The notes beneath the pieces were generated by a model, which was not told the DNA's origin, did no database searches, and saw nothing but the letters and a program-made list of their open reading frames with translations. Shown here one piece after another: positions 19,200-59,304 of a stretch of 64,000 nucleotides of DNA (within the stretch, counting starts at the first letter, position 1; each line of letters opens with the position of its first letter). Location: positions 124,001 through 188,000 of the IMG/VR virus record IMGVR_UViG_3300034072_001021. One strand, given 5' to 3'. The translations under genes and the position numbers were made by a program.

Positions 19200-21278
19200 T
19201 TATTGACGTTCTGAAGCCATGCCGATTGCTCTGGCAAGTTCTCCAGGAATAGAGTCCATGGTCCACATAGCCATCCGGCTCGGCGATACCATGTCATCCA
19301 TTGCTGCTTGTTGGCGCGCCAGACGAACAGCCCACTTACGCAGACCATTGATTTCAGCTTCAAGCGGAAGACCAGCCAAAATGGACAGGTAATCCGTATA
19401 GTTGTTATCGTCGTCATACACACTGCCGGAGAACGCCGATGCAATTGCTTGACCGGTATCGCCACCACCTTCGTTACCTGTAGCAGCACCAACTACCGCA
19501 CCAAACGCGTAACCACCTGCTTGAGCAACCGCACTACCCAGATCGAACGTTGGGTTAATCGGCATGTTGATTGCATTGGATAGATCGATGAGACCGACCG
19601 TTACATCAACTCCCAAGAAACCACCTACGTTGTTCCAACCCACATCACCAACACCGCGAGTGAATGACAACGAGTCAATCATTGCCAGTCGACTATGCGC
19701 ACGACCTTGTGCAAAGTACTCCACCAAGAAAGGTGACGTGTGAGACTGCTTACCAGTAGCCAGAGGAACTGCCATGGCGAACAGACAGCACATCGGAAGA
19801 ATGATGTTCTGTAGACGTGACATCGGATCGCCGTAGGGAGAACGCAACGGAATGTTCAGCGTCAACTTGTTGAAGTCGCAACTAGAACTGTCCCAGACCT
19901 TTGGAATGTCGACGAATGCAGAACCGGCCAACTGAGCCAGACCTTGGATACCCAAGCCCGTCGACACACCTTGAGCGAAATCACGCATGGCGTTGAATGC
20001 ACCGCCAACGATACCAGTACCTTCCAAGTTACCATCGAACATGGTGAAGCGGGTTTCGCGAGCCGTGGCAGACATGCCATTGAGCGTGCCCTGGATACTC
20101 GGTTCTTTGGTGCTGTTGTTAAATGACTCGGATTGCGTACCAGTGTAGTCTACACGGAAACTGACAAACTCAGAACCCATTCGTGCCTCAGCAAGAACAG
20201 CTTCAGCATACTGTTCAATATACGACTCGTCACCACGAACAGCATACTCGACGGAGTCTTTGTTAGCCTCTGCGTCTGCGTCACTCTGGTTACCAAACCG
20301 CTCATACTTCATCCAGACATCGGAGTATGCTTTAAGGGTCGCTGACGTGCTGTTACTCAGCTCCTTATACGCTCCGTTGAGGTCCTGTCCGTACAGATAG
20401 CCCTGGAAGATCTTTTTGATCTCATTCTTATCCGTCTTTCCTTTGAGTTTACCGCGAAGGATGTCATGACGAGCGTTGATCAGGCGTTGACCACGCTGGG
20501 CAATCGCAAATACATCGAGACCACCGTCTTCACGATATACCGTAGGAATCATCTTGTGATAAGCTTTGACATCTGTTTCGTCAAGGAGGTCTTCCTTGTT
20601 GAACAGAGCTTTACCGCCTTCATACATGACTCGCGGGATGATACCCATGTTGGCAGCAATGCCATTGACCATGCCAGAAACAGCAGACCAATAAGGATAC
20701 ATGGTGGGCTTCATGAAGTAGTACTTGCTGGCAGGACGTCTCAAGAAGAAGCGGATTACCTTGCCAGCAAACACAAACGGGATCAACGGAATCGACGCAA
20801 TCGAACCCATGGCCCAACCGAGGTTGTAGAAAAATCCAGGGGCACGACCAGTACGTGCCATAGACGCGGCAGGTACAGAGTAATAGTTCGCGTAGAACGA
20901 TGTCATCGAGTTGAACTCAGGGACACCGCAACGGAAATGGACTATCTGAGTGTTCTCGTAGAACTTCTCATGATAGACGCGGCCCATGCCATTGCCTTTG
21001 ACGCCATCCGTCTTGTTAATCCTCGACACACGAGGGATCAGGATGTTGTTACCTTTTGGATCAGATGCGTTACTGAACACGTTGTGCTTCAGATCTGCAT
21101 ACCGAGTGAATTGAGCCAGAGGATTGATAATGAAACATCCGCCCGGCGTGGTATCGCCAGCTTGCTGCATAGAGGTCGAATAGATGCGGTTAACCACCGC
21201 TTCATCGCCTCCGATTGCAGCATCTGCTGGCAGCAGAAAAGCTGATTTTACCCAGCCACTGTCAAGAATGTTATTCAT
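19200..21278 (-). CDS. Tail/baseplate structural protein (gp182-like)
   Basis: 692 aa, directly downstream of the gp181-like gene; GAGGT RBS. Confidence 0.65.
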   Translation of the reverse strand: MNNILDSGWVKSAFLLPADAAIGGDEAVVNRIYSTSMQQAGDTTPGGCFIINPLAQFTRYADLKHNVFSNASDPKGNNILIPRVSRINKTDGVKGNGMGRVYHEKFYENTQIVHFRCGVPEFNSMTSFYANYYSVPAASMARTGRAPGFFYNLGWAMGSIASIPLIPFVFAGKVIRFFLRRPASKYYFMKPTMYPYWSAVSGMVNGIAANMGIIPRVMYEGGKALFNKEDLLDETDVKAYHKMIPTVYREDGGLDVFAIAQRGQRLINARHDILRGKLKGKTDKNEIKKIFQGYLYGQDLNGAYKELSNSTSATLKAYSDVWMKYERFGNQSDADAEANKDSVEYAVRGDESYIEQYAEAVLAEARMGSEFVSFRVDYTGTQSESFNNSTKEPSIQGTLNGMSATARETRFTMFDGNLEGTGIVGGAFNAMRDFAQGVSTGLGIQGLAQLAGSAFVDIPKVWDSSSCDFNKLTLNIPLRSPYGDPMSRLQNIILPMCCLFAMAVPLATGKQSHTSPFLVEYFAQGRAHSRLAMIDSLSFTRGVGDVGWNNVGGFLGVDVTVGLIDLSNAINMPINPTFDLGSAVAQAGGYAFGAVVGAATGNEGGGDTGQAIASAFSGSVYDDDNNYTDYLSILAGLPLEAEINGLRKWAVRLARQQAAMDDMVSPSRMAMWTMDSIPGELARAIGMASERQ

Positions 21279-21297
21279 GAACTACCTCAGGAAAAAA

Positions 21298-21326
21298 GTA
21301 GGTGTGGGGTTTCCCCCACACCTATT
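21298..21326 (-). terminator. Intrinsic terminator
   Basis: TAGGTGTGGGG-TTTC-CCCCACACCTA with an A-tract on its left (U-tract on the minus strand). Confidence 0.7.
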
Positions 21327-21331
21327 TCGGT

Positions 21332-24300
21332 TTACCCTCGTCCTACAGACACCGTGCTTTTAGCCGCGGACTTCGGAATAGTTACCTGGTCGTTGACGGC
21401 ACCTTTACCACTGTTGGAAGCGGCTTGCGCTGCGCCAGCGGCTTCGCTAGCAGCTTTACCGCTCTGCATCAACGATACGAGAGCGACCAACTGCTCCAGC
21501 TGAGCTTCGTTGACACCAATCAGTCGATTCAACGACTTATCAGCACCACCGAAGTTATCGGCTTGGCGTACAGCTTGAGCTGCAGTCTGAGAGTCAGCTG
21601 TGGCTGCTGCCATGGACATCGTAGCAGTGGTGTTCTGCGTCTGTCGGGCATCAGCCGTCTCAGTAGCGGTTTCAACAGGTGTCGACGTCACCGGTGCATC
21701 ATTCACAGTATTTGTCGATGGCGGTGGTGTTGCCGTACCTTGTCCTTTAACCAGCGACACAGTATCCACCTTACCGACCAACTCTGGATTGGCTGCGTTT
21801 GCGGCTGCTACTTCGGTAGAAGCAGTTTGATCCGTTGCAGGTTGGGATTGTGTCCCGCCCTTCATCGCCGATGCTACTTGTGCTGCATCGGGCATCCGCC
21901 ACTTGGTGAGCTTCTTGTCGAAGTCTCTGTACACATCAGCTACCGTCCGAGGTCTTCCCCGACTATCCCAGAAGATGGACGGGTTGGAACTAGCTTGATC
22001 GGCACCTACGTGATTAACGGCCGGATCGGCAGGGTTTGCCGACAGGAAACGCTTAGCACCGCCTGGGCCCAGGAAGTGAGCCAGGTAAACGTCAGTATCA
22101 GTCACGCCACGACTGCCGACCGAGTCCTTGATTTTATCCATGTTCTCTCGGATATATTCCAATCCAAGGAGAGCGTTGGCTCGCGGATCTGTCTGTCGTG
22201 TACCTGGCGCAATACCGTACTTCGCTGCGTACTTGCCCATCAGCTCATCCCAGGTATCATCGATCACCTGGTAGTAACTTGCAGCCGAAGAAAGGTAACG
22301 CTGTTCTTTCTTCGACCATGGGCGAGCATTTGGATTGAACGACGATTCGACACCTGCCACAGATGCAGCCAACGCAGGATCTACACCAACCATGTTGGCA
22401 GCTGCCATCAACGTATCGCGGGAGTTCTCCCATCCGTCACCTTTCGGCTGAGGGATGTCGTTGATGTTACCGCCGGTACCACCACCAGGGTGGTTGATTG
22501 GTGTTCCAACAGGGAACGTGGTTTGCCCAACTGCTGTTTGAGGAGTAACGGACTGGCCGTTTGACGAGATTGCACCTTGTTGAGGCGTTTTCTTATCATC
22601 GGAACCAAACCATCCTTTTACAGTATCCCATGCACCGCTAGCAGCGTCGGCGATTGACGAACCAATGTTACTCAAGATACCTGGTTTAGAACCATCGGTA
22701 GCAGGACGATTTACCTGGTTTGGATCGACATCCTCCAGTTCACCATTCTTACCACGGATCTTACCAGCGTTTGCAACTTTTGGATCTTGCAGGACTTTGT
22801 CCTTGATCTTCTGCTGCAGCTGATATAACGGTTCTTTCACCGAGTTCATGTCGTCGTTCAACACATACCCGCGGAACGGAGACTCCGTAATATCCCAAAC
22901 AGAGATACCAGCATTGTCTCGGGCGTTCGATGTCTCTTTCAAGACATCTAGCAGTTGTGCTGGGTCAAGTTTGGTACCGGCATCCTTAGCGTCAATGTTT
23001 GCACGCATCCGTACTGCACTGCAGTACGTAAGGAACGTCGGAAGGAAACGACGATGGAACCAGACGTAGGTTTTCTCCACCTCTGCGTCGCCCACTGGAG
23101 ACAGGATAGCTTCAGCAATCAGGTAAGCTGCCGGGATATCATCTATCTTTGCCTGTTTGTCCTTGTCGTAAGAGACTTTAGGGTACAGGGCTTGTTCCAG
23201 TGTTTCCAACTTGTAGACGTAGTTAGCCAGCAGTTCAGTAAGACCATAGGTACGGTATCTGACAGCCATGCCGTCATCAACAACACCGGAACCCATCGTC
23301 CAGAACGGACTCAGTTCAGCTCTGGTAACTGATGCAGTTACAGCACCGGCACCAGCAGCTGCCGTAGTGGCAGCAACCACTTTACCCAGTGTAGATTTAT
23401 CCCCGCTTGCGGTTGGCATTGTGCCGGCACCACCACCACCGCCAGATCCACCCTGTGTCTTACCGCTTGCACCCGCAGCTGCGCCACGTTGCTGAGAAGT
23501 CACAGTGTTGGATGCGGCTGTAGATGCAATGCCTGCGGCAGCGCCTGCTTTCAATGCATCGGCGTGTTGTTGAGAAGCTGACTTCGGCGCGTCTTTCCCT
23601 TCTTTCTCAGCGGCCTCTTTAACATCATCCTTAATGTCGTCATACTCGTCTTCAACGTCACCAGCATCGTATTCGAGTTCGTCTTCGTCGGCGAAGGGGG
23701 CATCCATCTCGTCAAAGATGTTCTCCTTACCTTTCATCGAAACACCGTTAACAAACTTGACAGCTGCCTGACCAACCACTTTAGCATCGACCTGACCAAT
23801 ATCGGTAGATTTGGTCAGTACGTACATGTTGGACACGTGAGTCAGATACACCTCGCGGAAACGACCGTAGAGGAACTTGGTCATCCGCATGAAGTGTTCG
23901 TTCTCTTTCGGATCGGAGCCTTCTTCCAACTCGACACCAAAGATCTTGGTGAGTTGTTCGACAGGAATGCCGGCCAGATCCAACTCGGCTTTGCCATCCT
24001 CAGACACTTTAACGTGTTTGCCAGCAAGCTTCTCCATCTCTGCAAGAGCAAGAACCTGCTTACTTTCCGGATCAGGTTCTACACCGTACTGGATCATACG
24101 CAGTCTTGCGAGCAGAGGGAGCTTGTCCTTCATAGCACCGTAGATCAGCGAACCGATCGCCACGATACCTGTGACAACACCGACAGCTGCCAGAACAGGA
24201 GCACTGACCAGACCTGCAGCGCCAGCAACCGCACCTAACGCCATGCGACCTAGCCACATTGCACCTGTACGAACTGCTTGACTGCCGAGCATCCGTCCAG

Positions 24301-27300
24301 CGAACTTGGTAGCACCCCATGCTCCTTTACCGAGCATCTTGGTCGCCCACCAGGCACCCTTAGCAAGACCACTGGTTGCACGAGCCCCCAATCGAACAGC
24401 CTTACCAAAATTACCCATTTTGTCAAGGCCTTTATTGGCCAGTCGTTTTGTCCAGTCCCATGCGCGCCCTATCTTACCACGGGGTTTGGCATTAGGTGTC
24501 CGACCCCGACGACCGTTACGTCGTCTACGATCACGATCATCACCGTCACCATCGCCCATGTCGATATAGGTATCGCCGTCGCCACCGCCCTCTTCTTCGT
24601 CACCCATGCCGAACTTGTCAAGAAGGGACTGTAACATCCCGCCTTTAGCCATCATTCCTTTGGTGTCGGCGTATTTGCCTTTTACAGCATCTTTCGCTTT
24701 GTCGGCAAGTTCTTTACGACGTGACCAGATGTCCTGCATTGATCCTTTACGGACCTTCTCAGTGGTGACTTGCTTGAGCGTTTCATACTGCAGTTGCACG
24801 GAACGGATGGCGAGCGTGAGCATGTCTTGCTCTTGATCGCCTGTCAGTTCACTGGTGATATCTGCGCCAGCTTTGTTGCCGGTGAAGAAACTCATCAGTC
24901 GCTTAATACGAGGTTTGAACTTGCGTCCTTCTGCAGTTACCTTGTCCTTAGCGAGATTACCCGCTTTGTACATTTCGCTGCCGAGATTATCTGCAAACTC
25001 ACCCAACGTACCCGTACCGCGCATTTCATTGACTTTGTTACCAAGAGTTGTGATGTGACCCTTTCCGCCAGCAATCATGCCTGCCGTCCAAGCCCCTGCC
25101 TGCGATCCCTTGAACTTGTCAAGGAACTTGCCGACCTTTCCTTTTACACGACCCTTAGCATCGGCAAATACACCAGTCGACACCAGATCATTGTAACGAA
25201 CCACAGCCTTGGTCTTTATTTCTTCGACATCACCGCGGATATCTTCCCAGCGAGTCAGGATTTCGCCAGTGGCTTTGTCCCGGTATTCGCCAGCCTTCAA
25301 TTTCCATTCTTGAAGGACAGGGTGATCTTCACCCTGAATCCAGATGTCTTTACCTGTTTTCTTCAGCTCTTCGAACTTAGGAAGAAGGGTGTTCTTCGTG
25401 TACGATTTACCAGACTCCACAGCAGATGAAGCTTTACCTTTCATCTTCTGGAAGTACTCTGACATCCGTGCACTAGCCGTATTGAGCGTACCATCGCCAC
25501 GACCACCACCACAGCCACAGTTAGTCAACTGCTGGAGCAGATCAACTGTCTGTGCATGAAACTCACGCGATTCCTTGAGAATGGTAACGAGAGTACTCTT
25601 GTTACCTAGGTATCGCTCGAGTCCTCCGAGGCGGGAGGCAGGGGCTTGGGCAGCAGCGGACAAATCATCAGCTCGAGCAGCATCGCCGGCAAGAACAGAA
25701 TCGATTTTACCAGCGCCCATGAGGCGATCAGCAAGGCCGCGCACCCGATCAGCAGGAGTCGGCTTCCCTTTTTCAGTTCCCGAAGAGCCTGCGCTCTCAT
25801 CTTCATTGTCGAGTATGGCTTCCCAGAATTTGTTGAAGTTAACTCTGTCCTCTCGACCATCCTTATCGCGCTCGATGTAACCGAGCTTGCGCATGCTATC
25901 CTTACCGAGTACATCACTCAGGATACGAACACGATCACCGACAGCTGGGATCATGCTACTCATGCGACGGAATTGATCCGTGATGTTGTTTGTCCGATTC
26001 AGGGCGTCAGTACTATTGTCCAGACGTTTACCAGTTTCCGGATCGAGATTGAACGTGTCAGCAATCAACGATACAACTTCGTCGACAACCGCATAGTCCT
26101 CACCCGGATACTGTTCACGTTGAACCAAGCGAGACGGCACAAGATCACGGCCGTTGGCCAGCTCGTCAAGAAGCTTGCGCTTCAGAACACGCTGTGCTTT
26201 AGGCGACATTACATCGCCACCGATCTCTTTCAGGAACTCGTCTGTAGCCAGACGCAGAGACTCACGTTCTTGACGCGGCATGATCTGCCGGCCGACATCA
26301 CGCAGTTGTTCTTTCTCTGTAGTGAAACCACCACGAACAAGGTTGTAGACCTTCTTCTCGGAATCTTTCTCGCCTGTAACAGCGATACGGGACCAGTGAG
26401 CAATCTCGGAGAGATAACCCGGAATGATTTCAATCAGGGAACGACGTGCGATCTTGTCGAACGAAGCAACTTCATCGAGACGGTCTACAGAATCACCACC
26501 AGCCTTACTGTCGAGAATGAACTTCGGCAGGAAGTCCTTCAGCAACTGCATACCGGCAGCTTTATAACCAGTACCTTCTTCACGAGTGTTGGCCCACTCG
26601 TTTACCTTCTGCGGAAGACCGGAGAAGATACCGCGCAGTTTCTCACTGCCACGAGCGATGTGTTTGTTCTTGGCCAACAGGGGAGAGATCGCCATTGCGG
26701 CACGATCACGGATTTCACCGCCGATCATCGAACCGACGACTTCACCACCCATACCGACTTTGTCGATATCCTCACCACCCATACCACCCATCATCGCCAT
26801 TGGCGATACAATGCCTTGGACCAGTCCAGAGACGTTGTCCATGACTTGCTTGGTGTAGTTCTGGGCCCAGTTGGAAATGGTGTTGAGGCCATTGCCCATC
26901 AGTTTCTGTCTGGCCAGCTGACCAAACATTTCACTGCCACGGATCTTCACTGCCTCAGGGAGCGCGGTGTTTTTCCGAATGTTCTCAAGGATAGCTTCGT
27001 GCTTCTGAGAACTAACAGTGAAAGCGTCAAGCAATTGTTTCGTTGTTGCAGCCTGACGATAATTCAGTTCCAGCATCTTCTGCTGGTACTTGACAGTAAT
27101 CTTGTCTTGATAACCTACAAGACGAGACATACTCCGGTTGATAGCAGTCAGAGCCTGGATGCTGGATTTGAACCGAGCTTGTTCCAGAGCCTTGTTTTCT
27201 ACTTTTTCAACCGCTTCTTGCTTTTGTTTTTCGCCATCAGCTTCGACACGGGCTTTGAAGATTTCAGCCAGCGCAGCCAGATCACCATCTTCTTGCTCTT

Positions 27301-27733
27301 TGCGATAATCGGCATCCGACTTTACAGACGAACGCTCAATCTCTTCGAGAGAATTGTTGATCCTGTTGGCGAGTTTCTTGGGGAGAACTTTATCCCCAAT
27401 GAGACCCATGGCCCTACGGCCAAACTTTTTGCTTCCGGAAACCAGCTCCGGCGACTCTCCGGTTATCCTATCGTATAGTGATCGGGTGTCGGTAGCAATG
27501 TTTTCGAGAGTGTCTGCAGCAAGGCCGTAGCCTTCAGGAAGAGCAAGAGTCAGAGCCTTCCGAACTGCACTGGGACTCGTGAATTCTTGCTTGACGCCTC
27601 GTACAGCACCTTTGACAGCCCGAGTGACAGGTTTCCTCGAATCACCACTGTCTTCTTCGGCCTGAAATTCAGGCACGTCGAAGTCGAAATCATCGAGGTT
27701 AATACCGTCCAAGTCGATGTCGTCTTTAGCCAT
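21332..27733 (-). CDS. Large tail protein with lytic transglycosylase domain (gp181-like, tape-measure/tail tip)
   Basis: ATG 27733 with GGAGA RBS. Helical N-terminal half, central hydrophobic Gly/Ala segment, SLT-like domain at ~21900-22430 (GVESSFNPNA, DPRANA, YLAHFLGPGGA). Confidence 0.88.
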   Translation of the reverse strand: MAKDDIDLDGINLDDFDFDVPEFQAEEDSGDSRKPVTRAVKGAVRGVKQEFTSPSAVRKALTLALPEGYGLAADTLENIATDTRSLYDRITGESPELVSGSKKFGRRAMGLIGDKVLPKKLANRINNSLEEIERSSVKSDADYRKEQEDGDLAALAEIFKARVEADGEKQKQEAVEKVENKALEQARFKSSIQALTAINRSMSRLVGYQDKITVKYQQKMLELNYRQAATTKQLLDAFTVSSQKHEAILENIRKNTALPEAVKIRGSEMFGQLARQKLMGNGLNTISNWAQNYTKQVMDNVSGLVQGIVSPMAMMGGMGGEDIDKVGMGGEVVGSMIGGEIRDRAAMAISPLLAKNKHIARGSEKLRGIFSGLPQKVNEWANTREEGTGYKAAGMQLLKDFLPKFILDSKAGGDSVDRLDEVASFDKIARRSLIEIIPGYLSEIAHWSRIAVTGEKDSEKKVYNLVRGGFTTEKEQLRDVGRQIMPRQERESLRLATDEFLKEIGGDVMSPKAQRVLKRKLLDELANGRDLVPSRLVQREQYPGEDYAVVDEVVSLIADTFNLDPETGKRLDNSTDALNRTNNITDQFRRMSSMIPAVGDRVRILSDVLGKDSMRKLGYIERDKDGREDRVNFNKFWEAILDNEDESAGSSGTEKGKPTPADRVRGLADRLMGAGKIDSVLAGDAARADDLSAAAQAPASRLGGLERYLGNKSTLVTILKESREFHAQTVDLLQQLTNCGCGGGRGDGTLNTASARMSEYFQKMKGKASSAVESGKSYTKNTLLPKFEELKKTGKDIWIQGEDHPVLQEWKLKAGEYRDKATGEILTRWEDIRGDVEEIKTKAVVRYNDLVSTGVFADAKGRVKGKVGKFLDKFKGSQAGAWTAGMIAGGKGHITTLGNKVNEMRGTGTLGEFADNLGSEMYKAGNLAKDKVTAEGRKFKPRIKRLMSFFTGNKAGADITSELTGDQEQDMLTLAIRSVQLQYETLKQVTTEKVRKGSMQDIWSRRKELADKAKDAVKGKYADTKGMMAKGGMLQSLLDKFGMGDEEEGGGDGDTYIDMGDGDGDDRDRRRRNGRRGRTPNAKPRGKIGRAWDWTKRLANKGLDKMGNFGKAVRLGARATSGLAKGAWWATKMLGKGAWGATKFAGRMLGSQAVRTGAMWLGRMALGAVAGAAGLVSAPVLAAVGVVTGIVAIGSLIYGAMKDKLPLLARLRMIQYGVEPDPESKQVLALAEMEKLAGKHVKVSEDGKAELDLAGIPVEQLTKIFGVELEEGSDPKENEHFMRMTKFLYGRFREVYLTHVSNMYVLTKSTDIGQVDAKVVGQAAVKFVNGVSMKGKENIFDEMDAPFADEDELEYDAGDVEDEYDDIKDDVKEAAEKEGKDAPKSASQQHADALKAGAAAGIASTAASNTVTSQQRGAAAGASGKTQGGSGGGGGAGTMPTASGDKSTLGKVVAATTAAAGAGAVTASVTRAELSPFWTMGSGVVDDGMAVRYRTYGLTELLANYVYKLETLEQALYPKVSYDKDKQAKIDDIPAAYLIAEAILSPVGDAEVEKTYVWFHRRFLPTFLTYCSAVRMRANIDAKDAGTKLDPAQLLDVLKETSNARDNAGISVWDITESPFRGYVLNDDMNSVKEPLYQLQQKIKDKVLQDPKVANAGKIRGKNGELEDVDPNQVNRPATDGSKPGILSNIGSSIADAASGAWDTVKGWFGSDDKKTPQQGAISSNGQSVTPQTAVGQTTFPVGTPINHPGGGTGGNINDIPQPKGDGWENSRDTLMAAANMVGVDPALAASVAGVESSFNPNARPWSKKEQRYLSSAASYYQVIDDTWDELMGKYAAKYGIAPGTRQTDPRANALLGLEYIRENMDKIKDSVGSRGVTDTDVYLAHFLGPGGAKRFLSANPADPAVNHVGADQASSNPSIFWDSRGRPRTVADVYRDFDKKLTKWRMPDAAQVASAMKGGTQSQPATDQTASTEVAAANAANPELVGKVDTVSLVKGQGTATPPPSTNTVNDAPVTSTPVETATETADARQTQNTTATMSMAAATADSQTAAQAVRQADNFGGADKSLNRLIGVNEAQLEQLVALVSLMQSGKAASEAAGAAQAASNSGKGAVNDQVTIPKSAAKSTVSVGRG

Positions 27734-27812
27734 CGATAGCTCTCCATTTCGGCTTAATATAGCAAGCCTTCTCATACCAACTGTCGATTTGTGACTATAA
27801 GTAGGTACTTAA

Positions 27813-52934: not shown

Positions 52935-55151
52935 ATGCAGACTATTCTTTTTGAGCGCGATTGGGATTATTACCCGACTGCGATCTGGGATACCAAGACT
53001 ACCAACAAGTCTTTCCTTGAATTCTCAGCGCTTCTTAAGCACATGGGGGTCAAGAACCATTTGTTCCCTCTGGCTCTTATGCAGCCGGAGCTTCAGGGGG
53101 TTGATCCGTACGATCCCTCCTTGTCAGACGACATAAAACTGAAGATCAAAATCGAGTGTACGTTTAACCCATGGTACTTCATCCGTGAGGTTATGCGTGT
53201 ACCTCCAGCGGCAGGTGATACACCTGTTAAGCTGGAAGCTAACCGGGGCAACATTTCTCTATGGTGGTCGTTCCTTAACCACATCGACTATTTCCTCGTC
53301 CAGATTCGTCAGACTGGTAAGTCGCTGAACTCTGACGGTATCTCGGTTTGGTATCAAATCTTCGGCGCACGTAACTCCCGTGCTAACCTGTTCACCAAAG
53401 GTGACTTGTTTAAAGAACACATTGCACGTCTGAAGAAACTACGTGCTCTGTTGCCGAAGTACTTAGTCAACATCGTCAAGAAAGATACCGACAACCAGAA
53501 AGAATTCACCAACATGTCTCAGGGCAACCGCATGGTGGTGTACATCCCGCAAAAGGATGAAGAAGCAGCAAACAACCTGGGTCGTGGTCTGACCACCCCC
53601 TACAACCACGTGGACGAAATTGCGTTCCTTAAGAACGTACACATCTCCCTCGGTGTTATGCTGGCGGGCGGTGGTGCTGCTCGTGAAGAAGCGGCACGTA
53701 ACGGCCTGCCGTACGGCAACATCTTCACTACTACTGCTGGCGAACTGGATACTCCGGAAGGCGCTTACGCGTACGACCTGATGACCGGTGGTGCAGAGTG
53801 GAACGATGCGTTCTATGACTGTGCCAATACCGACGAGCTGTATGAGGTGGTGCGGAAGCAATGCCGTAACAAAGATGCAATCCTCATCAACGGTACGTTC
53901 AACCATCGTCAATTAGGTAAGACTGATGCATGGTTGAGGAAGAAGATCGCGGAATCTCGTCAGACCGGTGACGGTGTACGTCGAGACTACATGAACGAGT
54001 GGACGACGGGTAATGCCCGAAACCCGCTCAGCAAAGATACGCTGCGTAAGATCCATGCCAGTGTAACTAAGCCTTCTTACCTTGAGATCGACAAACAAGA
54101 CCACTACTCCATCCGCTGGTACATCACGCGAGAAGAAGTAGAGACAGGAATCTCTCGTCGTCAAATGGTCATGGGCATCGATACCTCCAACGCCGTAGGG
54201 CGAGACAACATCACAGGTGTCATTGTCGACATCAGTACACTTGAGGTGGTGGGTGCATGGACTGTCAACGACTCTAACCTGACCGCATTTGCAATGTGGT
54301 TGGCAAAGATCATTGTCAGATTCCAGAACATCACCATTGTACCTGAATCGAAATCGACGTGGATTGGCATCCTCGATACCTTGCTGCTCACGTTGCCGAA
54401 CTATAAGGTCGATCCGGCTAAACGTATCTATTCGACACTGGTGGATGCTAAGGACGAATCACCTGAGGCTAAACGGCGCTATAACGAGTATGTGGGCGAT
54501 CGCGACAACTACCGCTCCTACCGTAAGTTCTTCGGCTTCCCAACGAACAGCCAGCTCCGTGAGATCATTTACGGGCCTGTTCTGCAAGAGGCTGCGAAGA
54601 AGTCTGGTGCTGTGGTGCGTGACGCTAAGCTGCAAAGCGAACTGGGTCGTCTGGTTGAGCGTAACGGACGTATTGACCACGATGCATCCGGGCACGATGA
54701 CCACGTCATCAGCTGGCTGCTTTGCCATTGGTTCCTTACCTACGGTAAGAACCTCGATCACTACGGAATCACTGTCAGTGAAATCAAACGTCGTGTCTAT
54801 GAAGCAGAGCACAAGCTCTCGTGGAGTGAACAACGTCGTTATGATGACCAACAGAGTATCCGTGATGAGATTGGTCGCCTGAGTGAAACGCTTGGTAACG
54901 AGCGTAACACTTACGAACGAATCAAGCTACAACAACGACTGGATCTGCTCATCAGCAAGGTTGATGATGAGTTTGATATGGAGGGTATCACTTCCATTGA
55001 CCAGATCAAAGAGAATAGCCGCGAGAAGAAGATGATTGAAACTCGCTCGTTCGGTCCAGGTAAACCGTTGGAAATCGAGAAGCCCCTGAACACCAGTTTC
55101 AACAGACGTCGTGAGATGTTCAAGAATCAAAATGTGATGGTGGTGGTATGA
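52935..55151 (+). CDS. terL: Terminase large subunit (gp25-like)
   Basis: NPWYFIRE, Walker A RQTGKS, Walker B HVDEIAF, TTTAG, nuclease motifs MGIDTS and GHDDHV. Confidence 0.92.
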   Translation: MQTILFERDWDYYPTAIWDTKTTNKSFLEFSALLKHMGVKNHLFPLALMQPELQGVDPYDPSLSDDIKLKIKIECTFNPWYFIREVMRVPPAAGDTPVKLEANRGNISLWWSFLNHIDYFLVQIRQTGKSLNSDGISVWYQIFGARNSRANLFTKGDLFKEHIARLKKLRALLPKYLVNIVKKDTDNQKEFTNMSQGNRMVVYIPQKDEEAANNLGRGLTTPYNHVDEIAFLKNVHISLGVMLAGGGAAREEAARNGLPYGNIFTTTAGELDTPEGAYAYDLMTGGAEWNDAFYDCANTDELYEVVRKQCRNKDAILINGTFNHRQLGKTDAWLRKKIAESRQTGDGVRRDYMNEWTTGNARNPLSKDTLRKIHASVTKPSYLEIDKQDHYSIRWYITREEVETGISRRQMVMGIDTSNAVGRDNITGVIVDISTLEVVGAWTVNDSNLTAFAMWLAKIIVRFQNITIVPESKSTWIGILDTLLLTLPNYKVDPAKRIYSTLVDAKDESPEAKRRYNEYVGDRDNYRSYRKFFGFPTNSQLREIIYGPVLQEAAKKSGAVVRDAKLQSELGRLVERNGRIDHDASGHDDHVISWLLCHWFLTYGKNLDHYGITVSEIKRRVYEAEHKLSWSEQRRYDDQQSIRDEIGRLSETLGNERNTYERIKLQQRLDLLISKVDDEFDMEGITSIDQIKENSREKKMIETRSFGPGKPLEIEKPLNTSFNRRREMFKNQNVMVVV

Positions 55152-55187
55152 CGGCATAGAGGGAGGCTCAGGCCTCCCTCTATGCCG
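55152..55187. terminator. Bidirectional hairpin, archetype of the CGGCATA family
   Basis: CGGCATAGAGGGAGGC-TCAG-GCCTCCCTCTATGCCG, perfect 16-bp stem with no U-tract. Confidence 0.8.
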
Positions 55188-55189
55188 GA

Positions 55190-56059
55190 TCACTTAAAGT
55201 TCGAGTAGACGACCATCCGAAGATAGTCGGCCAGATCCCTCGAACGGTAGAACAGTGCCGCATGCAGAGCAGTGTTGTATGGATGCATCATTTCACGATC
55301 CAAGTACTTGATCAGCGGGTGCGGGTCATCCACACCACCTGCCAGTTCACGGAATGAAAGCAATTTACCCATTCGTTCTTCGAGATCATCGAAGATCTTT
55401 TCCAACTGATCTGCAAACTCATCGAACTTGTCTGCCCAGCGACAGAAGATGATTGCCTTTTCGGCAGTCATTGATCCAATAGGGATCGGCATGTTCGTAT
55501 CAGGGCGCACTGGTACCTTGAGGACTACCAACATCTCATCACGGAAGGGCTTAGCTTCCACGATGACACGGGAGGACTTCATACCAAGTAAACGGACGGT
55601 TGACTTAGCGAGATGTTCTGCCACTGTTTGAGGACGGCTGGACAATGCATCATTCATGCTTATTTTGGCAAGCATGGAAGTGACACGACCAGCCCATTCG
55701 AGATATCGCATACTACGATCGTAGGCGATACTCGATAAGACAGTGTACATATTGAATTCACGGTTGAGGAACTCATCAGTCATCGAATCGATCGATGATC
55801 CACAAACAACCAGCCATGCAGGATGGACAGTTGGTGAACCATTCGATGGGCCTTTGAAAACCTGTTCGTTAAGACTGACATCGGTGAACTTATCCATGTT
55901 CGCCGGATCATTCCAAGGTGCACGAGGCAGTTTCCTAACGGTGTATTCGTCGGGGAGTTTGAATTCCCCGAATATCTCACTTAACCTACCTTCCATAGAC
56001 ACGGTCTGGACTCCTTCTGCGGAGTGCTGTGCTCTCAAATACTCGAGCAACTTTTCCAT
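55190..56059 (-). CDS. Putative head protein with short propeptide
   Basis: N-terminal HSAE and VSME motifs; overlaps the upstream stop. Confidence 0.6.
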   Translation of the reverse strand: MEKLLEYLRAQHSAEGVQTVSMEGRLSEIFGEFKLPDEYTVRKLPRAPWNDPANMDKFTDVSLNEQVFKGPSNGSPTVHPAWLVVCGSSIDSMTDEFLNREFNMYTVLSSIAYDRSMRYLEWAGRVTSMLAKISMNDALSSRPQTVAEHLAKSTVRLLGMKSSRVIVEAKPFRDEMLVVLKVPVRPDTNMPIPIGSMTAEKAIIFCRWADKFDEFADQLEKIFDDLEERMGKLLSFRELAGGVDDPHPLIKYLDREMMHPYNTALHAALFYRSRDLADYLRMVVYSNFK

Positions 56060-57462: not shown

Positions 57463-58044
57463 ATGCAACAGCAATCCGTACTTCCAGCTATTGTTACCCG
57501 TCATCTCGCTGACAGCGAAGCTGACTTCATCGACCTGTCCAATCTGGAACTGGTCATGGATCAAGAAGAACAAAGCAACAAGGGGATCACCGTGAAGCAA
57601 GAAAGGACGCTGTCTGGCGCAAACATCACCGATCATGGCAAGGGTACTCTGAGTAGTCGTATCTGCCAGATCGCCCACGACTGTCTGCATGTTGATCTTC
57701 AGACCGAGTTCCGTGAAATGGCTATGAGTCATCCGGCGTTCGTGAAGATCTGCGACGAGATCCGTCAGGAGATCGAAGAAGGTCGGATGATCCAGATCAT
57801 GGATCGTCTCGAAGCTATCGGCTGCGAGGTCTTCTATGACCGCAAAGAAAAGAAACTGACCCTGGGGCTGAACAAGAAGAACCTGTTCAAGCATTTCAAC
57901 GAACACTCGCGGGTCATCGACCTGCGTAACCGTCAAGGCATCAGCATCGTTAATGGGATTAACCCCATGTACGACAAAGAGCCGAAACATCAAGTACCTG
58001 AATTGGTGACCAAGTCTTACTACTTGATCATCGATCTGAAATAA
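57463..58044 (+). CDS. Hypothetical early protein
   Basis: GGAG RBS at ATG 57463. Confidence 0.7.
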   Translation: MQQQSVLPAIVTRHLADSEADFIDLSNLELVMDQEEQSNKGITVKQERTLSGANITDHGKGTLSSRICQIAHDCLHVDLQTEFREMAMSHPAFVKICDEIRQEIEEGRMIQIMDRLEAIGCEVFYDRKEKKLTLGLNKKNLFKHFNEHSRVIDLRNRQGISIVNGINPMYDKEPKHQVPELVTKSYYLIIDLK

Positions 58045-58053
58045 CCCCCTTTC

Positions 58054-58127
58054 AAGATCTCTGCTGAGCCTGAGCCGGTTAGCAGCACCCCCTTGCTTTC
58101 GCAACCGGTGCCCAGAGATCTTTTTTT
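58054..58127 (+). terminator. Long composite hairpin with U-tract
   Basis: AAGATCTCTG/CAGAGATCTT outer stem; CCGGTT/AACCGG and AGCA/TGCT inner stems. Confidence 0.6.
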
Positions 58128-58145
58128 GTTTAAGGAGCTAGGAGC

Positions 58146-58550
58146 ATGCTAGAGGAGATTGTGAAGGACTTCAAAAGCATCGTTACCGACTATCAGTCCT
58201 ATCCTTCAGAAGACGTCATTCCTAAAGATGTCCATGAACGACATTCCAAACTAGCAGCCAAGTGTGTCCTTGAGACTATGCGGTTGTTAGTGGGGTATGA
58301 CGAGACTGTGATGAATCTTCCAATGTCTGCGTTCCTGAAGTACCTTGAACACATTCGCATGGATGTCTTCGAGGAATTGGCTAAGGAAGGTATCGCATTC
58401 CACTACTACTACCACAATGGCCTGCTCTACGGCAGACTGGTGGATCAGACTCAAGTCATGGTCATGTACCCTGTGACCACTACACAGCAGACTCCTCTGG
58501 TCCGTCAGTTCATTGATGGGTTTGAGATTAAGGAATCAACGATCCATTAA
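58146..58550 (+). CDS. Hypothetical protein
   Basis: AGGAG RBS, 134 aa. Confidence 0.7.
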   Translation: MLEEIVKDFKSIVTDYQSYPSEDVIPKDVHERHSKLAAKCVLETMRLLVGYDETVMNLPMSAFLKYLEHIRMDVFEELAKEGIAFHYYYHNGLLYGRLVDQTQVMVMYPVTTTQQTPLVRQFIDGFEIKESTIH

Positions 58551-58558
58551 ACCGATAC

Positions 58559-58597
58559 GATCACTGCTCTTAACGGGGCAGTGATCTATTCTTTTTT
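58559..58597 (+). terminator. Intrinsic terminator
   Basis: GATCACTGCTC...GGGCAGTGATC followed by a T-tract. Confidence 0.7.
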
Positions 58598-58616
58598 GTT
58601 TAATGGGGAGTTCTGT

Positions 58617-58813
58617 ATAGTATGATCAGTCTTGCTACTTTTCTTGGGAAGGAAGGGAAAGGGGGTAAGATTGATGACGAACGGAGTGAGGAATCAATCT
58701 GGGGGATAGGGTAGGTAGGGTATATCTGCGTGGTTGGTGGATAGCCGTAGCGTAGCGTAGGGTAGACAACAGACACCATGCCTTATTCTCTTCTGAGGGG
58801 GCATAGCCCCCTC
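58617..58813 (+). other. Non-coding G-rich structured element (candidate origin, packaging site or ncRNA)
   Basis: Six G3-G5 tracts flanking a GNA-triloop/sheared-GA hairpin; CC(GTAGC)2GTAGG; closed by GAGGGGGC-ATA-GCCCCCTC. Confidence 0.5.
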
Positions 58814-58887
58814 TATATATAGACCGGCCTGACGTACCAAACTATATCAGGTTTTCCGTAAAAGAAAAAAAGTTTAAGAGTGCCGCC

Positions 58888-59304
58888 ATGAATCCTTTTG
58901 CATCGTTGGAAAGTATCCTCTCCCCTCAAGGTGAACCGGAAGCTCCGTCTATCGGTCTGCTGGTAGAGGACTGGGATGAGAACCTGAGACATGATGTCCA
59001 ACAGATCGTGGACACTGGGTATCAGGTGGTGGTGATTCCTACTGGCTCAACTTCGATGGAAGTCAAGAGTGCAGATGAAGAACAAATGGGTACGGGTGAT
59101 CCTGTCTCCATGATAGAACTGGATCATCACGAGCCTCGTGTCCTGTTCTACTACAAAGGTAAGCCCGAGAATGCTGCTGAAGGCATCCCTGTGCTGATCG
59201 TGGAAGAAGGCAAGGTGAAAGTGGACATGGAGGGTCGGGTCAAGGAGTTGGCTGAGCATTTAGGACTGCTTGATGAGGAATTCGACTATGTGGATCGTTG
59301 TTGA
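58888..59304 (+). CDS. Acidic hypothetical protein, possibly head-associated
   Basis: N-terminal ASLES motif. Confidence 0.6.
   Translation: MNPFASLESILSPQGEPEAPSIGLLVEDWDENLRHDVQQIVDTGYQVVVIPTGSTSMEVKSADEEQMGTGDPVSMIELDHHEPRVLFYYKGKPENAAEGIPVLIVEEGKVKVDMEGRVKELAEHLGLLDEEFDYVDRC

What the first reader, a model, noticed from the sequence alone, without database searches (positions are those of the whole stretch)
58617..58813. Strand-specific structured DNA element: GNA-triloop/sheared-GA hairpins bracketed by G-tracts
Seen: the longest non-coding gap in the window (58551-58887) contains AGATTGAT-GA-C-GA-AC-GGA-GT-GA-G-GA-ATCAATCT (58668-58700). This folds as an 8-bp stem, two tandem GA/GA mismatches and a C-GGA-G triloop. 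G-tracts flank it at 58646, 58655 and 58661, and at 58701, 58709 and 58718. A second motif, CC-GTA-GC-GTA-GC-GTA-GG (58745-58761), contains GCGTAGC. Known: GCGNAGC mini-hairpins and tandem sheared G.A pairs are exceptionally stable in single-stranded DNA; GNA-type triloop hairpins occur in ssDNA priming signals and N4 virion-RNAP promoters. These non-canonical pairs can form only on the + strand. Inference: a quadruplex-duplex ssDNA signal, such as a replication origin, primase or packaging site, or nuclear-shell anchor. Alternatively it is a ~190-nt ncRNA, since a late-type ATAGTATG (58617-58624) opens it and a hairpin (58795-58813) closes it.
Basis: partly seen in the sequence, partly recalled or inferred. 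Interest (0 to 1): 0.75.

Follow-up and report, generated by a model that had tools for sequence, protein, structure and literature searches.

The report
Mirror-purine hairpin element in jumbo phages
A single-copy non-coding element of a clade of phiKZ-type jumbo phages, far better conserved than its neighbouring genes, has two purine tracts around a GA-rich hairpin that are exact mirror images and change together in evolution, which suggests a purine-purine (reverse-Hoogsteen, triplex-type) fold that I know of in no natural RNA or phage element.

Summary
The sequence features are at the stated coordinates. The element (about 58612-58845) is single-copy. It recurs in about 25 jumbo-phage contigs and in Pseudomonas phage pPa_SNUABM_DT01. 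Nucleotide identity is about 81%, while the adjacent proteins share only 17-33% amino-acid identity.

The 17-nt cap is also found on dispersed intergenic hairpins in many bacteria and archaea.

The "G-tracts" are not a plain quadruplex signal. They are 20-31-nt arms of a perfect mirror repeat. Over 11 alleles and 264 facing positions I found only G/G, A/A, A(5')/T(3') and C(5')/T(3'). At least six changes, including an 11-nt insertion, occur on both arms. This is the reverse-Hoogsteen (purine-motif triplex, PPRH-like) code.

Several features favour a transcribed, strand-specific RNA:
- an invariant TATG (the phiKZ late-promoter core);
- a second covarying helix, P1, rich in G.U pairs;
- a closing hairpin that matches this phage's terminator consensus;
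- recovery of the region in metatranscriptomes that lack the neighbouring 10 kb.

The (GCGTA)3 motif is lineage-specific. Function is inferred, not shown: a purine clamp RNA, possibly acting on its own DNA. Origin, packaging and nuclear-anchor roles are untested.

The parts
58559..58596 (+). Intrinsic terminator of the upstream gene (12-bp stem, tetraloop, T-run). It bounds the element on the left.
   Evidence: Every relative has a different hairpin plus T-run at the same place.
58612..58624 (+). Promoter-like box TCTGTATAGTATG. The invariant TATG lies at 58621-58624. The predicted start is G58624.
   Evidence: The box reads GTAT[A/T]GTATG in 15 of the 16 aligned relatives and TTATAGTATG in L009; TATG is invariant in all of them, and sequence conservation begins here. 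It matches the phiKZ late-promoter core T-3ATG+1 (PMC7598289). TATAGTATG occurs once in the genome. The metatranscriptome contig of run X17 starts at 58629. Promoter activity is inferred, not shown.
58628..58636 (+). P1 5' strand (AGTCTTGCT). It pairs with 58664-58672.
   Evidence: 97.6% of cells are paired. Pair col14-col57 is GC 9, AT 4, GT 3 over distinct alleles. Several pairs switch between G.U and G-C.
58637..58645 (+). Pyrimidine-rich linker (ACTTTTCTT). It is 7-9 nt long, variable in sequence, and C/T-rich in every relative (mostly pyrimidine, with some A or G).
   Evidence: It pairs with the inner half of the 5' arm in every MFE fold. A swap test shows no allele-specific match.
58646..58665 (+). 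5' purine arm GGGAAGGAAGGGAAAGGGGG. It is pure purine in every allele, except one C in the 31-nt form.
58664..58672 (+). P1 3' strand (GGTAAGATT). It overlaps P2 by AGATT, so extended P1 and P2 exclude each other.
   Evidence: The two states are near iso-energetic.
58668..58700 (+). It has an 8-bp stem (58668-58675 with 58693-58700). Its 17-nt cap reads GA-C-GA-AC-GGA-GT-GA-G-GA (58676-58692).
   Evidence: 100% paired. Pair Y-R is TA 11, CG 5. Pair R-Y is AT 13, GC 3. The triloop is G-N-A. The cap is identical to that of dispersed hairpins in bacteria and archaea.
58701..58720 (+). 3' arm GGGGGATAGGGTAGGTAGGG. It is the mirror image of the 5' arm, with T allowed where the 5' arm has A.
   Evidence: Eleven arm pairs give 264 facing positions: G/G 163, A/A 70, A/T 27, C/T 4, and nothing else. 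It is the only beyond-chance mirror repeat in the genome.
58721..58794 (+). 3' domain. It includes (GCGTA)3 at 58745-58761, which is specific to the window's lineage, and a pyrimidine stretch at 58781-58794.
   Evidence: Its identity among relatives is about 80%, though the window lineage is the most divergent. The alifold helices here are weakly supported.
58795..58813 (+). Closing hairpin GAGGGGGC-ATA-GCCCCCTC. It is a variant of the phage's own terminator-type hairpin and has a three-nucleotide loop: ATA here, and GAA or GTA (GNA-type) in the other relatives.
   Evidence: Three covarying pairs. The genome consensus ATAGAGGGAGGC-N4-GCCTCCCTCTAT lies 20-30 nt after stop codons.
58814..58887 (+). 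Conserved tail (TATATAG box, GACG..., A-run) up to the start of the next gene. In the relatives whose sequence runs that far, a canonical hairpin plus T-run terminator and a new TATAG box follow before the next gene. The window lacks that insert.
   Evidence: The RNA contig of run X17 runs to 58845.

Best explanation
The element is an autonomous non-coding gene of a DT01-like clade of phiKZ-type jumbo phages.

Transcription is inferred to start at the invariant TATG (G58624) and to run on the + strand for about 190-225 nt. In most relatives it would run about 300 nt, to an intrinsic terminator. The product is purine-rich and folds only on this strand.

Two covarying Watson-Crick helices compete for the segment AGAYU:
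- P1 closes a loop that holds a pyrimidine linker and the 5' purine arm.

When P2 forms, it brings the two purine arms side by side and antiparallel. Because the arms are exact mirror images, like faces like: G.G, A.A, and U(3' arm).A(5' arm). This is the geometry of reverse-Hoogsteen (trans Watson-Crick/Hoogsteen) pairs. It is the design of synthetic polypurine reverse-Hoogsteen hairpins (PPRH) and of the third strand in a purine-motif triplex.

That fold leaves the Watson-Crick face of the all-purine 5' arm free. It could hold a pyrimidine strand: its own linker, the C-rich template DNA of its own locus, or a target in trans. So the element most likely works as a nucleic-acid clamp or triplex module.

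Shown here: conservation, single copy, strand asymmetry, P1, P2 and terminator covariation, and mirror covariation.

Inferred: transcription start and end, the reverse-Hoogsteen geometry, and the clamp function.
For: Conservation and autonomy
- About 81% nucleotide identity, against about 62% (near saturation) for the two upstream genes. Their proteins share 17-33% identity.
- Downstream lie four unrelated genes in different relatives, so the element is not the leader of any one gene.
- It is single-copy in the genome.

Mirror arms
- Eleven alleles give 264 positions with only G/G, A/A, A5'/T3' and C5'/T3'.
- Positions 10-13 each occur as G/G and as A/A. One further A-to-G change and an 11-nt insertion also occur on both arms.
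- The 5' arm never carries T.
- A direct-repeat reading scores at chance.

RNA-type signals
- P1 has a GC/AU/GU pair and many G.U to G-C switches.
- P2 has two compensatory pairs.
- The closing hairpin has three compensatory pairs and fits the phage's terminator consensus.
- RNA fold z is -5.15 on + and -0.6 on -.
- TATG is invariant and is the phiKZ late core (PMC7598289).

Expression
- Contigs of four metatranscriptomes cover the region: X17 at 58629-58845 with no differences, plus X16, X18 and X15.
- X16, X17, X18/X19 and X20 hold under 5% of the adjacent 10 kb.

Precedent
[quoted passage not shown] An RNA version was reported to bind ssDNA and dsDNA targets (PMC8466063).
Against: - There is no strand-specific or end-mapped RNA data. 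The contigs carry no direction, and DNA carry-over in RNA libraries cannot be excluded. One contig (X18) also spans the upstream terminator.
- Purine-motif triplexes are, from my own knowledge of the in-vitro literature, much less stable with RNA strands than with DNA. This favours a DNA or mixed structure.
- The linker-arm pairing shows no allele specificity.
- No pyrimidine target longer than 11 nt exists elsewhere in the phage genome.
- The nearest-neighbour model prefers P1 over P2 in 9 of 14 sequences, although it gives no credit to G.A or GNA stacking.
- No tool here can fold Hoogsteen pairs, so the geometry rests on the substitution pattern alone.
Confidence: 0.5

Rival explanations
1. 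A DNA-level element. In the duplex genome the mirror repeat forms intramolecular purine-motif H-DNA, with the 3' arm as third strand on the 5' arm duplex and the GA hairpin as the turn. Alternatively, transcription from the TATG displaces the + strand, which folds and locks a persistent R-loop (an 'H-loop'). Either way the element would serve as a cis site such as a replication origin or primer, or a pause site.
For: - The triplet code is met exactly: G.GC, A.AT, T.AT, and T facing a C. Ts occur only in the arm that would be the third strand, and the other arm is pure purine.
- The element is single-copy and clade-wide.
- The promoter is oriented so that the purine strand is the non-template strand.
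- The DNA fold of the + strand gives z -2.8, against -0.5 for the - strand.
Against: - P1 and the long-range helices are full of G.U/G.T wobble states and covary. That is expected for RNA, not for duplex DNA.
- H-DNA in a duplex needs neither P1 nor the pyrimidine linker.
- There is no replication, supercoiling or R-loop evidence.
- The GC-skew curve is uninformative.
Confidence: 0.25
2. One reading: a G-quadruplex-duplex hybrid. The invariant outer GGG and inner GGGGG runs of both arms would form a three-tetrad quadruplex, with the hairpin as a long loop.
For: Four G-runs are invariant in all alleles: GGG, GGGGG, hairpin, GGGGG, GGG. Like-with-like facing would also hold in tetrads of a fold-back tetraplex.
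Against: - A quadruplex does not require the A, T and C positions and the indels between the runs to mirror each other, yet they do so without exception.
- Loops of 12-23 nt lie outside canonical G4 rules.
- The ViennaRNA G4 model predicts none.
- The A/T asymmetry between the arms is unexplained.
Confidence: 0.1
3. A cis-regulatory leader, attenuator or terminator region of a neighbouring gene, with the P1/P2 alternative acting as a switch. The purine tracts would act as Shine-Dalgarno-like or protein-binding (for example GGA-motif) sites.
For: P1 and P2 exclude each other and are near iso-energetic. In the window the next gene follows without a terminator of its own. There are many GGA motifs.
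Against: - The downstream gene belongs to four unrelated families among relatives. Most relatives have a full terminator plus a new promoter-like box between the element and that gene.
- The upstream gene ends in its own terminator.
- Protein or ribosome binding does not predict mirror symmetry. Two sites on one strand bound by the same protein should be direct repeats.
Confidence: 0.1
4. A packaging (pac) site, or another site bound by the product of a nearby gene. TerL lies 3.4 kb upstream, and the syntenic 134-aa protein A lies directly upstream.
For: Synteny of genes A and B with the element in all relatives. TerL lies at window 52935-55151. The site is single-copy.
Against: - Protein A has no detectable fold relative and evolves fast, while the element barely changes.
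- The record's 'terminal repeat' is a 127-nt assembly overlap, so no terminus information exists.
- Nothing links the element to termini.
Confidence: 0.05

Closest known systems
Polypurine reverse-Hoogsteen hairpins (PPRH; synthetic oligonucleotides, Ciudad/Noe laboratory) and antiparallel purine triplex clamps
   Same: Both have two antiparallel polypurine arms that are mirror repeats, joined by a turn, with G.G and A.A facing. The Watson-Crick face of one arm is free for a pyrimidine target. An RNA version is reported to work (PMC8466063).
   Different: - This element is natural, evolutionarily conserved and probably transcribed.
- The turn is a 33-nt GA/GNA-capped hairpin instead of T5.
- One arm carries T/U opposite A.
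- It is embedded in a larger fold (P1, linker, 3' domain).
- No target is known.
H-DNA (*H-DNA, purine-motif intramolecular triplex) at homopurine mirror repeats
   Same: It is a mirror repeat with a homopurine strand, and the third-strand code G.GC, A.AT, T.AT is met.
   Different: - Classic H-DNA tracts have short spacers, and I know of no evidence that they covary.
- Here there is a long structured spacer and a promoter, and wobble-rich covarying helices point to a single strand (RNA).
d(GCGNAGC)-type mini-hairpins with sheared G.A pairs and GNA triloops; hairpin promoters of N4 virion RNA polymerase
   Same: The cap has C-GNA-G triloops, with N free, and tandem GA/GA steps. It is strand-specific.
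   Different: - The cap sits on an 8-bp covarying stem within a transcript-like unit.
- I tested no N4-type polymerase association or promoter consensus.
- This phage has phiKZ-type multisubunit polymerases.
Small RNAs of phiKZ-like phages (for example the conserved sRNA upstream of the phiKZ gp182 / 201phi2-1 gp277 homologues; PMC11512511)
   Same: Short non-coding transcription units in giant Pseudomonas phages, bounded by phage promoters and sequence-conserved terminators.
   Different: - It is a different locus. The gp181/gp182 homologues lie at window ~19.2-27.8 kb.
- phiKZ has no copy of the cap within 2 mismatches.
- No phage record except DT01 matches.
RNA triple helices (MALAT1/PAN ENE, telomerase RNA, SAM-II, preQ1-II)
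   Same: A structured RNA in which a third strand lies in the major groove of a purine-pyrimidine helix.
   Different: The known ones use U.A-U and C+.G-C (pyrimidine motif, parallel). Here the pattern is purine-purine and antiparallel, and runs over 20-31 positions.
Transcript-primed origins and persistent R-loops (ColE1 RNA II, T4 ori(uvsY)/ori(34), mitochondrial CSB II, GAA.TTC 'H-loops')
   Same: A promoter sends a G/purine-rich transcript across a C-rich template. The displaced strand can fold.
   Different: There is no evidence of replication initiation here. This is a resemblance from my own knowledge only.
Dispersed intergenic palindromes (REP/MITE-like hairpin repeats) of bacteria and archaea carrying the same 17-nt cap
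   Same: The cap GACGAACG[A/G]AGTGAGGA is identical, on a free, complementary stem.
   Different: - Those are multi-copy, often in inverted pairs of TGTCATTTC-cap-GAAATCT type.
- They lack purine arms.
- They lie next to unrelated genes.

Membership tests
Any Rfam 15 RNA family | Covariance-model score at or above the family's gathering threshold | tested here: not met
   There was no hit in the whole window at gathering thresholds. Only chance-level hits (E 0.9-6.6) appeared in 58400-59000. The bacterial and archaeal cap hairpins also match no family, apart from adjacent tRNAs.
phiKZ-type late (non-virion RNAP) promoter | T-3 A T G+1 overlapping the start site, with all four bases required (PMC7598289) | tested here: met
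   TATG at 58621-58624 is invariant in all 16 aligned relatives, at the 5' edge of conservation. The motif is too short to be diagnostic.
phiKZ-type late (non-virion RNAP) promoter | Transcription initiates there in infected cells or in vitro | not testable with these tools
   The only evidence is a directionless metatranscriptome contig starting at 58629.
Canonical intramolecular G-quadruplex | Four runs of three or more G separated by short loops (about 1-7 nt) | tested here: not met
   The window's arms have three G3+ runs each. DT01-type arms have two. Using the four invariant runs needs loops of 12-23 nt plus a 35-nt loop (the 33-nt hairpin with the two linking bases). The ViennaRNA G4 model predicts none.
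Purine-motif mirror repeat (H-DNA-forming sequence / PPRH design) | Two antiparallel arms that are mirror images, one of them homopurine | tested here: met
   All 264 facing positions fit (G/G, A/A, A/T, C/T). The 5' arm is pure purine except one C, which faces T. Shuffle p is at most 2e-5 per allele.
Purine-motif mirror repeat (H-DNA-forming sequence / PPRH design) | Reverse-Hoogsteen pairs or a triplex actually form (Mg2+-dependent; sensitive to N7 modification) | not testable with these tools
   No tool here models Hoogsteen pairing. The geometry is inferred from mirror covariation and from the A/T asymmetry.
GNA-triloop / sheared G.A mini-hairpin | A C-G closing pair around G-N-A with N free, and 5'-GA/3'-AG tandem steps | tested here: met
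   The cap reads GA-C-GA-AC-GNA-GT-GA-G-GA with N = A8, G6, T2. Unrelated hairpins carry variants with swapped inner pairs (for example GAGGAGCGNAGCGACGA) and GA-GC-GNA-GC-GA caps with all four N.
Intrinsic (rho-independent) terminator | A G+C-rich hairpin followed by a U-run | tested here: not met
   The closing hairpin 58795-58813 is followed by TATATATAG, not a T-run. It does fit the phage's own terminator-type consensus. The upstream hairpin 58559-58586 does meet the rule.
Conserved giant-phage sRNA upstream of the phiKZ gp182 homologue | Location in the 5' UTR of the gp182/gp277 tail-protein homologue | tested here: not met
   The phiKZ gp181-gp182 gap is 55 nt. Their homologues lie at window 19200-27775 on the - strand. 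The gene downstream of the element is unrelated and variable.
N4-type hairpin promoter | A 5-7-bp stem with a 3-nt purine-centred loop, recognised by a single-subunit virion RNAP | not tested
   I did not search for an N4-like RNAP gene. The phage carries a phiKZ-type multisubunit RNAP beta subunit.

The most novel reading that the evidence does not exclude
The element encodes a natural reverse-Hoogsteen 'purine clamp' RNA. It would be the first natural counterpart of synthetic PPRHs, with 20-31 consecutive covarying purine-purine pairs. Its free Watson-Crick face would seize the C-rich template strand of its own locus and form a persistent RNA-DNA triplex or R-loop. That structure would mark one unique site on the genome of a nucleus-forming jumbo phage, for example as the transcript-primed replication origin, which as far as I know has not been mapped for this group.
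Probability: 0.15. Interest if true: 0.92.

Novelty: categorically new. Interest (0 to 1): 0.8.

Why it matters
If the mirror covariation reflects reverse-Hoogsteen pairing, this would be a natural, evolutionarily maintained purine-motif clamp or triplex. As far as I know, that structure has been met only as a synthetic tool (PPRH) or as an in-vitro property of mirror repeats.

It would add like-with-like purine covariation to the signals used to find structured nucleic acids. Standard RNA tools missed it completely.

It also gives phiKZ-type phages a unique, extremely conserved, single-copy cis or trans element. A cultured phage (pPa_SNUABM_DT01 on P. aeruginosa) carries it, so it can be tested directly. 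That could make questions such as where replication starts, or how the genome is marked inside the phage nucleus, experimentally approachable.

Separately, its 17-nt cap links it to a widespread hairpin-repeat family of bacteria and archaea. I found no Rfam family for that repeat, and no paper quoting the sequence strings I searched.

Tried and rejected
- Rfam (gathering and permissive thresholds) and tRNA/tmRNA scans found nothing.
- A sigma-70 promoter scan found none at the element. The -35-like spacings in relatives are wrong (by eye).
- TATAGTATG as a genome-wide late consensus is rejected, because it occurs only once. The recurrent promoter-like box is ATACATTA(T).
- GC skew and origin: the cumulative maximum falls near 182 kb, but the curve is noisy and genes alternate strand every few kb.
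- Terminal repeat and pac site: the 'DTR' is a 127-nt assembly overlap.
- Coding potential: the mini-ORFs (30 aa from 58622; MTNEVRN* across the cap) are not frame-conserved, and identity at the nucleotide level argues against a peptide.
- G4 prediction: none.
- Direct-repeat reading of the arms: chance level.
- Linker-arm covariation: the swap test is negative.
- A trans target in the phage genome: only 10-11-mers, which is chance level.
- Gene association of the cosmopolitan hairpins: none. There are 98 Pfam families among 67 neighbours, with GIY-YIG twice. By eye there is no orientation bias.
- Upstream protein A: a confident model (pLDDT 86), but no PDB or BFVD fold match beyond the single significant BFVD hit (A0A8A6C6Z2, 137 aa, unnamed, probably the DT01 orthologue). 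The protein B model is too poor to search.
- phiKZ has no copy of the cap.
- Literature searches for the sequence strings found nothing relevant.
- One viral scan with NNN in the loop and the genome-collection scan return about the number of hits expected by chance. Only their flanks were informative.
- DT01 proteins could not be sent to structure prediction, so I left them out.
Full report
**1. What is there**

The window is bases 124001-188000 of a 259,140-bp circularly assembled virus record. Its 'terminal repeat' is a 127-nt assembly overlap. The phage carries a phiKZ-type multisubunit RNA polymerase beta subunit, a tail sheath and a large terminase.

The gap 58551-58887 lies between two + strand ORFs (58146-58550 and 58888-59304). 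It opens with a textbook intrinsic terminator for the upstream gene (58559-58586 plus a T-run). No Rfam family or tRNA matches.

**2. It is a conserved, autonomous module**

- Among 50,697 phage records, only Pseudomonas phage pPa_SNUABM_DT01 matches, in the syntenic gap (79.5% over 155 nt).
- Pattern scans found the element in about 25 further jumbo-phage contigs of 250-277 kb from IMG/VR and metagenomes.
- Across nine diverse relatives the element keeps about 81% nucleotide identity.
- The two syntenic upstream genes are at about 62%, near the floor of the alignment method. Their proteins share 17-33% identity with the window's.
- The gene downstream belongs to four unrelated families in different relatives.
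- In the relatives whose sequence runs that far, a canonical hairpin plus T-run terminator and a fresh TATAG box separate the element from that gene.

So the element is not the leader of a particular gene. It is single-copy in the genome.

**3.

- The 8-bp stem is paired in every sequence. Two pairs changed on both sides (T-A to C-G; A-T to G-C).
- The 17-nt cap is invariant except for the middle base of the triloop, G-N-A (A8, G6, T2). That is what a GNA triloop predicts.
- An 8-bp inverted repeat alone would not be notable. The window has 114 with short loops, against 17 in shuffles.

**4. The cap is cosmopolitan**

The 17-mer GACGAACG[A/G]AGTGAGGA also occurs in bacterial and archaeal genomes of many phyla, and in unrelated viral and metagenome contigs.

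The raw hit counts are near chance for such a short pattern in such large collections. The flanks are not:
- 37 of 133 genomic hits have 5 or more perfectly complementary flanking bases, where about 0.1% is expected.
- The stem sequences differ from genome to genome.
- GAA outnumbers GGA 109 to 19.

The hairpins are intergenic. They are often multi-copy within one genome and often come in inverted pairs (TGTCATTTC-cap-GAAATCT ... its variant in reverse). Some lie next to tRNA 3' ends. They show no common neighbouring gene family.

Variants with swapped inner pairs, and simpler GA-GC-GNA-GC-GA caps with all four N, occur in the same loci.

The cap is therefore a self-contained structural module: tandem G.A, base pair, tandem G.A, two base pairs, GNA triloop. 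I found no Rfam family for it and no paper that quotes the sequence strings I searched.

**5. The 'G-tracts' are a mirror repeat**

Read outward from P2, the two arms are the same sequence.

For the window:
- 5' arm: GGGAAGGAAGGGAAAGGGGG
- 3' arm read 3' to 5': GGGATGGATGGGATAGGGGG

Over 11 distinct arm pairs and 264 facing positions, the combinations are G/G 163, A/A 70, A(5')/T(3') 27 and C(5')/T(3') 4. There are no others.

The variable block at positions 10-13 reads GGGA, AGAG, AGGG, GAGG or GGAG, always on both arms. One lineage has a further A-to-G change on both arms. Another carries an 11-nt insertion in both arms. That makes at least six independent double events and no violation.

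Each allele beats all but 0-2 of 100,000 shuffles. Read as a direct repeat, the arms score at chance. In the whole genome this is the only mirror repeat above shuffle level.

The asymmetry is informative. The 5' arm is pure purine, apart from one C in the long form. T occurs only in the 3' arm, always opposite A or opposite that C.

From established nucleic-acid chemistry (my own knowledge; Beal and Dervan's purine motif; the Leontis-Westhof trans Watson-Crick/Hoogsteen family), antiparallel G.G, A.A and T/U.A are the reverse-Hoogsteen set. The purine of one strand offers its Hoogsteen edge and keeps its Watson-Crick edge free.

[quoted passage not shown] It is also the design of the third strand of purine-motif H-DNA.

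Other readings fit less well:
- A dimeric protein would call for direct or inverted repeats, not mirror repeats.
- A quadruplex does not require the inter-run bases and indels to mirror each other.
- The ViennaRNA G4 model finds no quadruplex.

**6. RNA or DNA?**

Evidence for an RNA:
- The invariant TATG at the 5' edge of conservation equals the phiKZ late-promoter core T-3ATG+1 (PMC7598289).
- A second helix, P1 (58628-58636 with 58664-58672), is 97.6% paired. One pair occurs as GC 9, AU 4, GU 3, and several pairs switch between G.U and G-C. Wobble-rich covariation is typical of RNA.
- The closing hairpin has three compensatory pairs and is a variant of the phage's own terminator-type consensus ATAGAGGGAGGC-N4-GCCTCCCTCTAT.
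- The + strand folds with z -5.15, against -0.6 for the - strand.
- Metatranscriptome contigs cover the region: X17 at 58629-58845 with no differences, X16 at 58731-58955, X18 at 58464-58880, and X15.
- The adjacent 10 kb is held by X12 and X15 but not by X16, X17, X18/X19 or X20. In four or five RNA libraries from four studies, the element is recovered while its neighbourhood is not.

The contig evidence has limits. The contigs have no direction, and DNA carry-over is possible. One contig spans the upstream terminator.

Evidence for a DNA or mixed structure:
- From the in-vitro literature as I know it, purine-motif triplexes are DNA-favoured.
- G.A/GNA caps are classic ssDNA hairpins.
- The promoter orientation makes the purine strand the non-template strand. 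A G-rich transcript on a C-rich template could leave the + strand free to fold.

P1 and P2 share the segment AGAYU. In the nearest-neighbour model the two states are near iso-energetic. P1 wins in 9 of 14 sequences, but that model gives no credit to the cap or to purine-purine pairs.

A pyrimidine-rich linker always precedes the 5' arm and can pair with the arm's inner half. The match is generic rather than allele-specific.

**7. Most likely mechanism**

I commit to a transcribed, strand-specific element whose core is a hairpin-linked reverse-Hoogsteen purine clamp.

P2 and its very stable cap nucleate the fold and align the arms. The 3' arm (G, A, U) reads the Hoogsteen face of the all-purine 5' arm. 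The Watson-Crick face of the 5' arm is then available for a pyrimidine strand: the linker, the template DNA of the same locus, or an unknown target.

No complementary tract longer than 11 nt exists elsewhere in the phage genome. This favours action on its own locus, or on a host target.

Whether the outcome is a stable ncRNA, a persistent R-loop or triplex (origin- or landmark-like), or a switch is open.

Confidence:
- About 0.9 that this is a selected, strand-specific structured element.
- About 0.5 for the transcribed-clamp reading.
- About 0.25 for a mainly DNA-level role.

**8. What is not supported**

- The (GCGTA)3 motif is lineage-specific.
- The GC-skew coincidence is not informative.
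- No terminus information exists.
- The known conserved giant-phage sRNA is a different locus (PMC11512511).
- phiKZ has no copy of the cap.
- The syntenic upstream protein A gives a confident model (pLDDT 86) with no fold relative beyond one significant BFVD hit, probably the DT01 orthologue. It offers no functional lead.

**9. Novelty**

The components are known: GNA/G.A mini-hairpins, mirror-repeat purine tracts, phage sRNAs and phiKZ-type promoters. I know of no natural family that combines a hairpin-linked purine mirror repeat with base-for-base like-with-like covariation, and none turned up in Rfam or in my literature searches.

Noticed in passing
Loci L023-L142 (genomes), L008/L011/L013/L021 (viral), L261-L310 (metagenomes); the cap corresponds to window 58676-58692: The 17-nt cap GACGAACG[A/G]AGTGAGGA tops intergenic hairpins in many bacterial and archaeal phyla. 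The stems are free and complementary. The typical form is TGTCATTTC-cap-GAAATCT, often paired with an inverted variant TGTCATTTC-GAGCGNAGCGA-GAAATCT. The hairpins are multi-copy in some MAGs (one Hydrogenedentota MAG has at least 13 copies). There is no Rfam family, no shared neighbour gene and no match in my literature searches.
   Followed up: partly
L079:1-84, L089:276-382, and also L024, L042, L090, L133, L134, L261, L291: Several of these cosmopolitan hairpins lie within a few bases of the 3' end of a tRNA gene, in archaea as well as bacteria. Rfam confirmed the tRNAs in L079 and L089. The others I saw by eye from T-arm motifs.
   Followed up: partly
Genome-wide, for example window 55163-55195 (genome 179163-179195), 2769-2800 and 58795-58818: The phage uses a sequence-conserved, often bidirectional terminator-type hairpin, (C)ATAGAGGGAGGC-N4-GCCTCCCTCTATG, 20-30 nt after stop codons and without a T-run. 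This is reminiscent of the conserved terminator motifs reported for phiKZ and 201phi2-1.
   Followed up: partly
Genome-wide, for example window 59659 (genome 183659) and 15103: A recurrent promoter-like box ATACATTA(T), preceded by a T-rich stretch, lies 25-80 nt upstream of start codons. It occurs in 9 of the 160 upstream regions where 0.5 is expected, and at 15 sites genome-wide. It is probably the early or middle promoter consensus of this phage.
   Followed up: partly
window 57463-58550 and the downstream gene at 58888-59304: Two fast-evolving genes always precede the element: B (about 200 aa) and A (about 135 aa). Protein A gives a confident model with no fold match. The gene after the element is swapped among four unrelated families in relatives. 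This marks a recombination or cassette boundary right at the element.
   Followed up: partly
window 58621-58636 against 58664-58675: In the window's own lineage P1 can extend to 12 bp (ATCAGTCTTGCT with GGTAAGATTGAT). An ATC insertion after the TATG accompanies the A-to-G change in the P2 stem, so the same G can pair either in P2 (with C58695) or in P1 (with C58627).
   Followed up: partly
whole window: Perfect 8-bp inverted repeats with loops of 3-20 nt are about seven times more frequent than in shuffles (114 against 17). The genome is unusually rich in hairpins.
   Followed up: no
genome ends (G000:C1:1-127 and 259014-259140): The record's 'direct terminal repeat' is only a 127-nt overlap. 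This indicates a circular assembly, not physical termini.
   Followed up: yes
window 58673-58708 and relatives: Across the cap the sequence reads as a mini-ORF: ATG ACG AAC GAA GTG AGG AAT TAG/TAA (MTNEVRN*) in most relatives, and even in unrelated hairpins. In the window it reads MTNGVRNQSGG*. I judged this incidental, because the nucleotides, not just the codons, are identical.
   Followed up: partly
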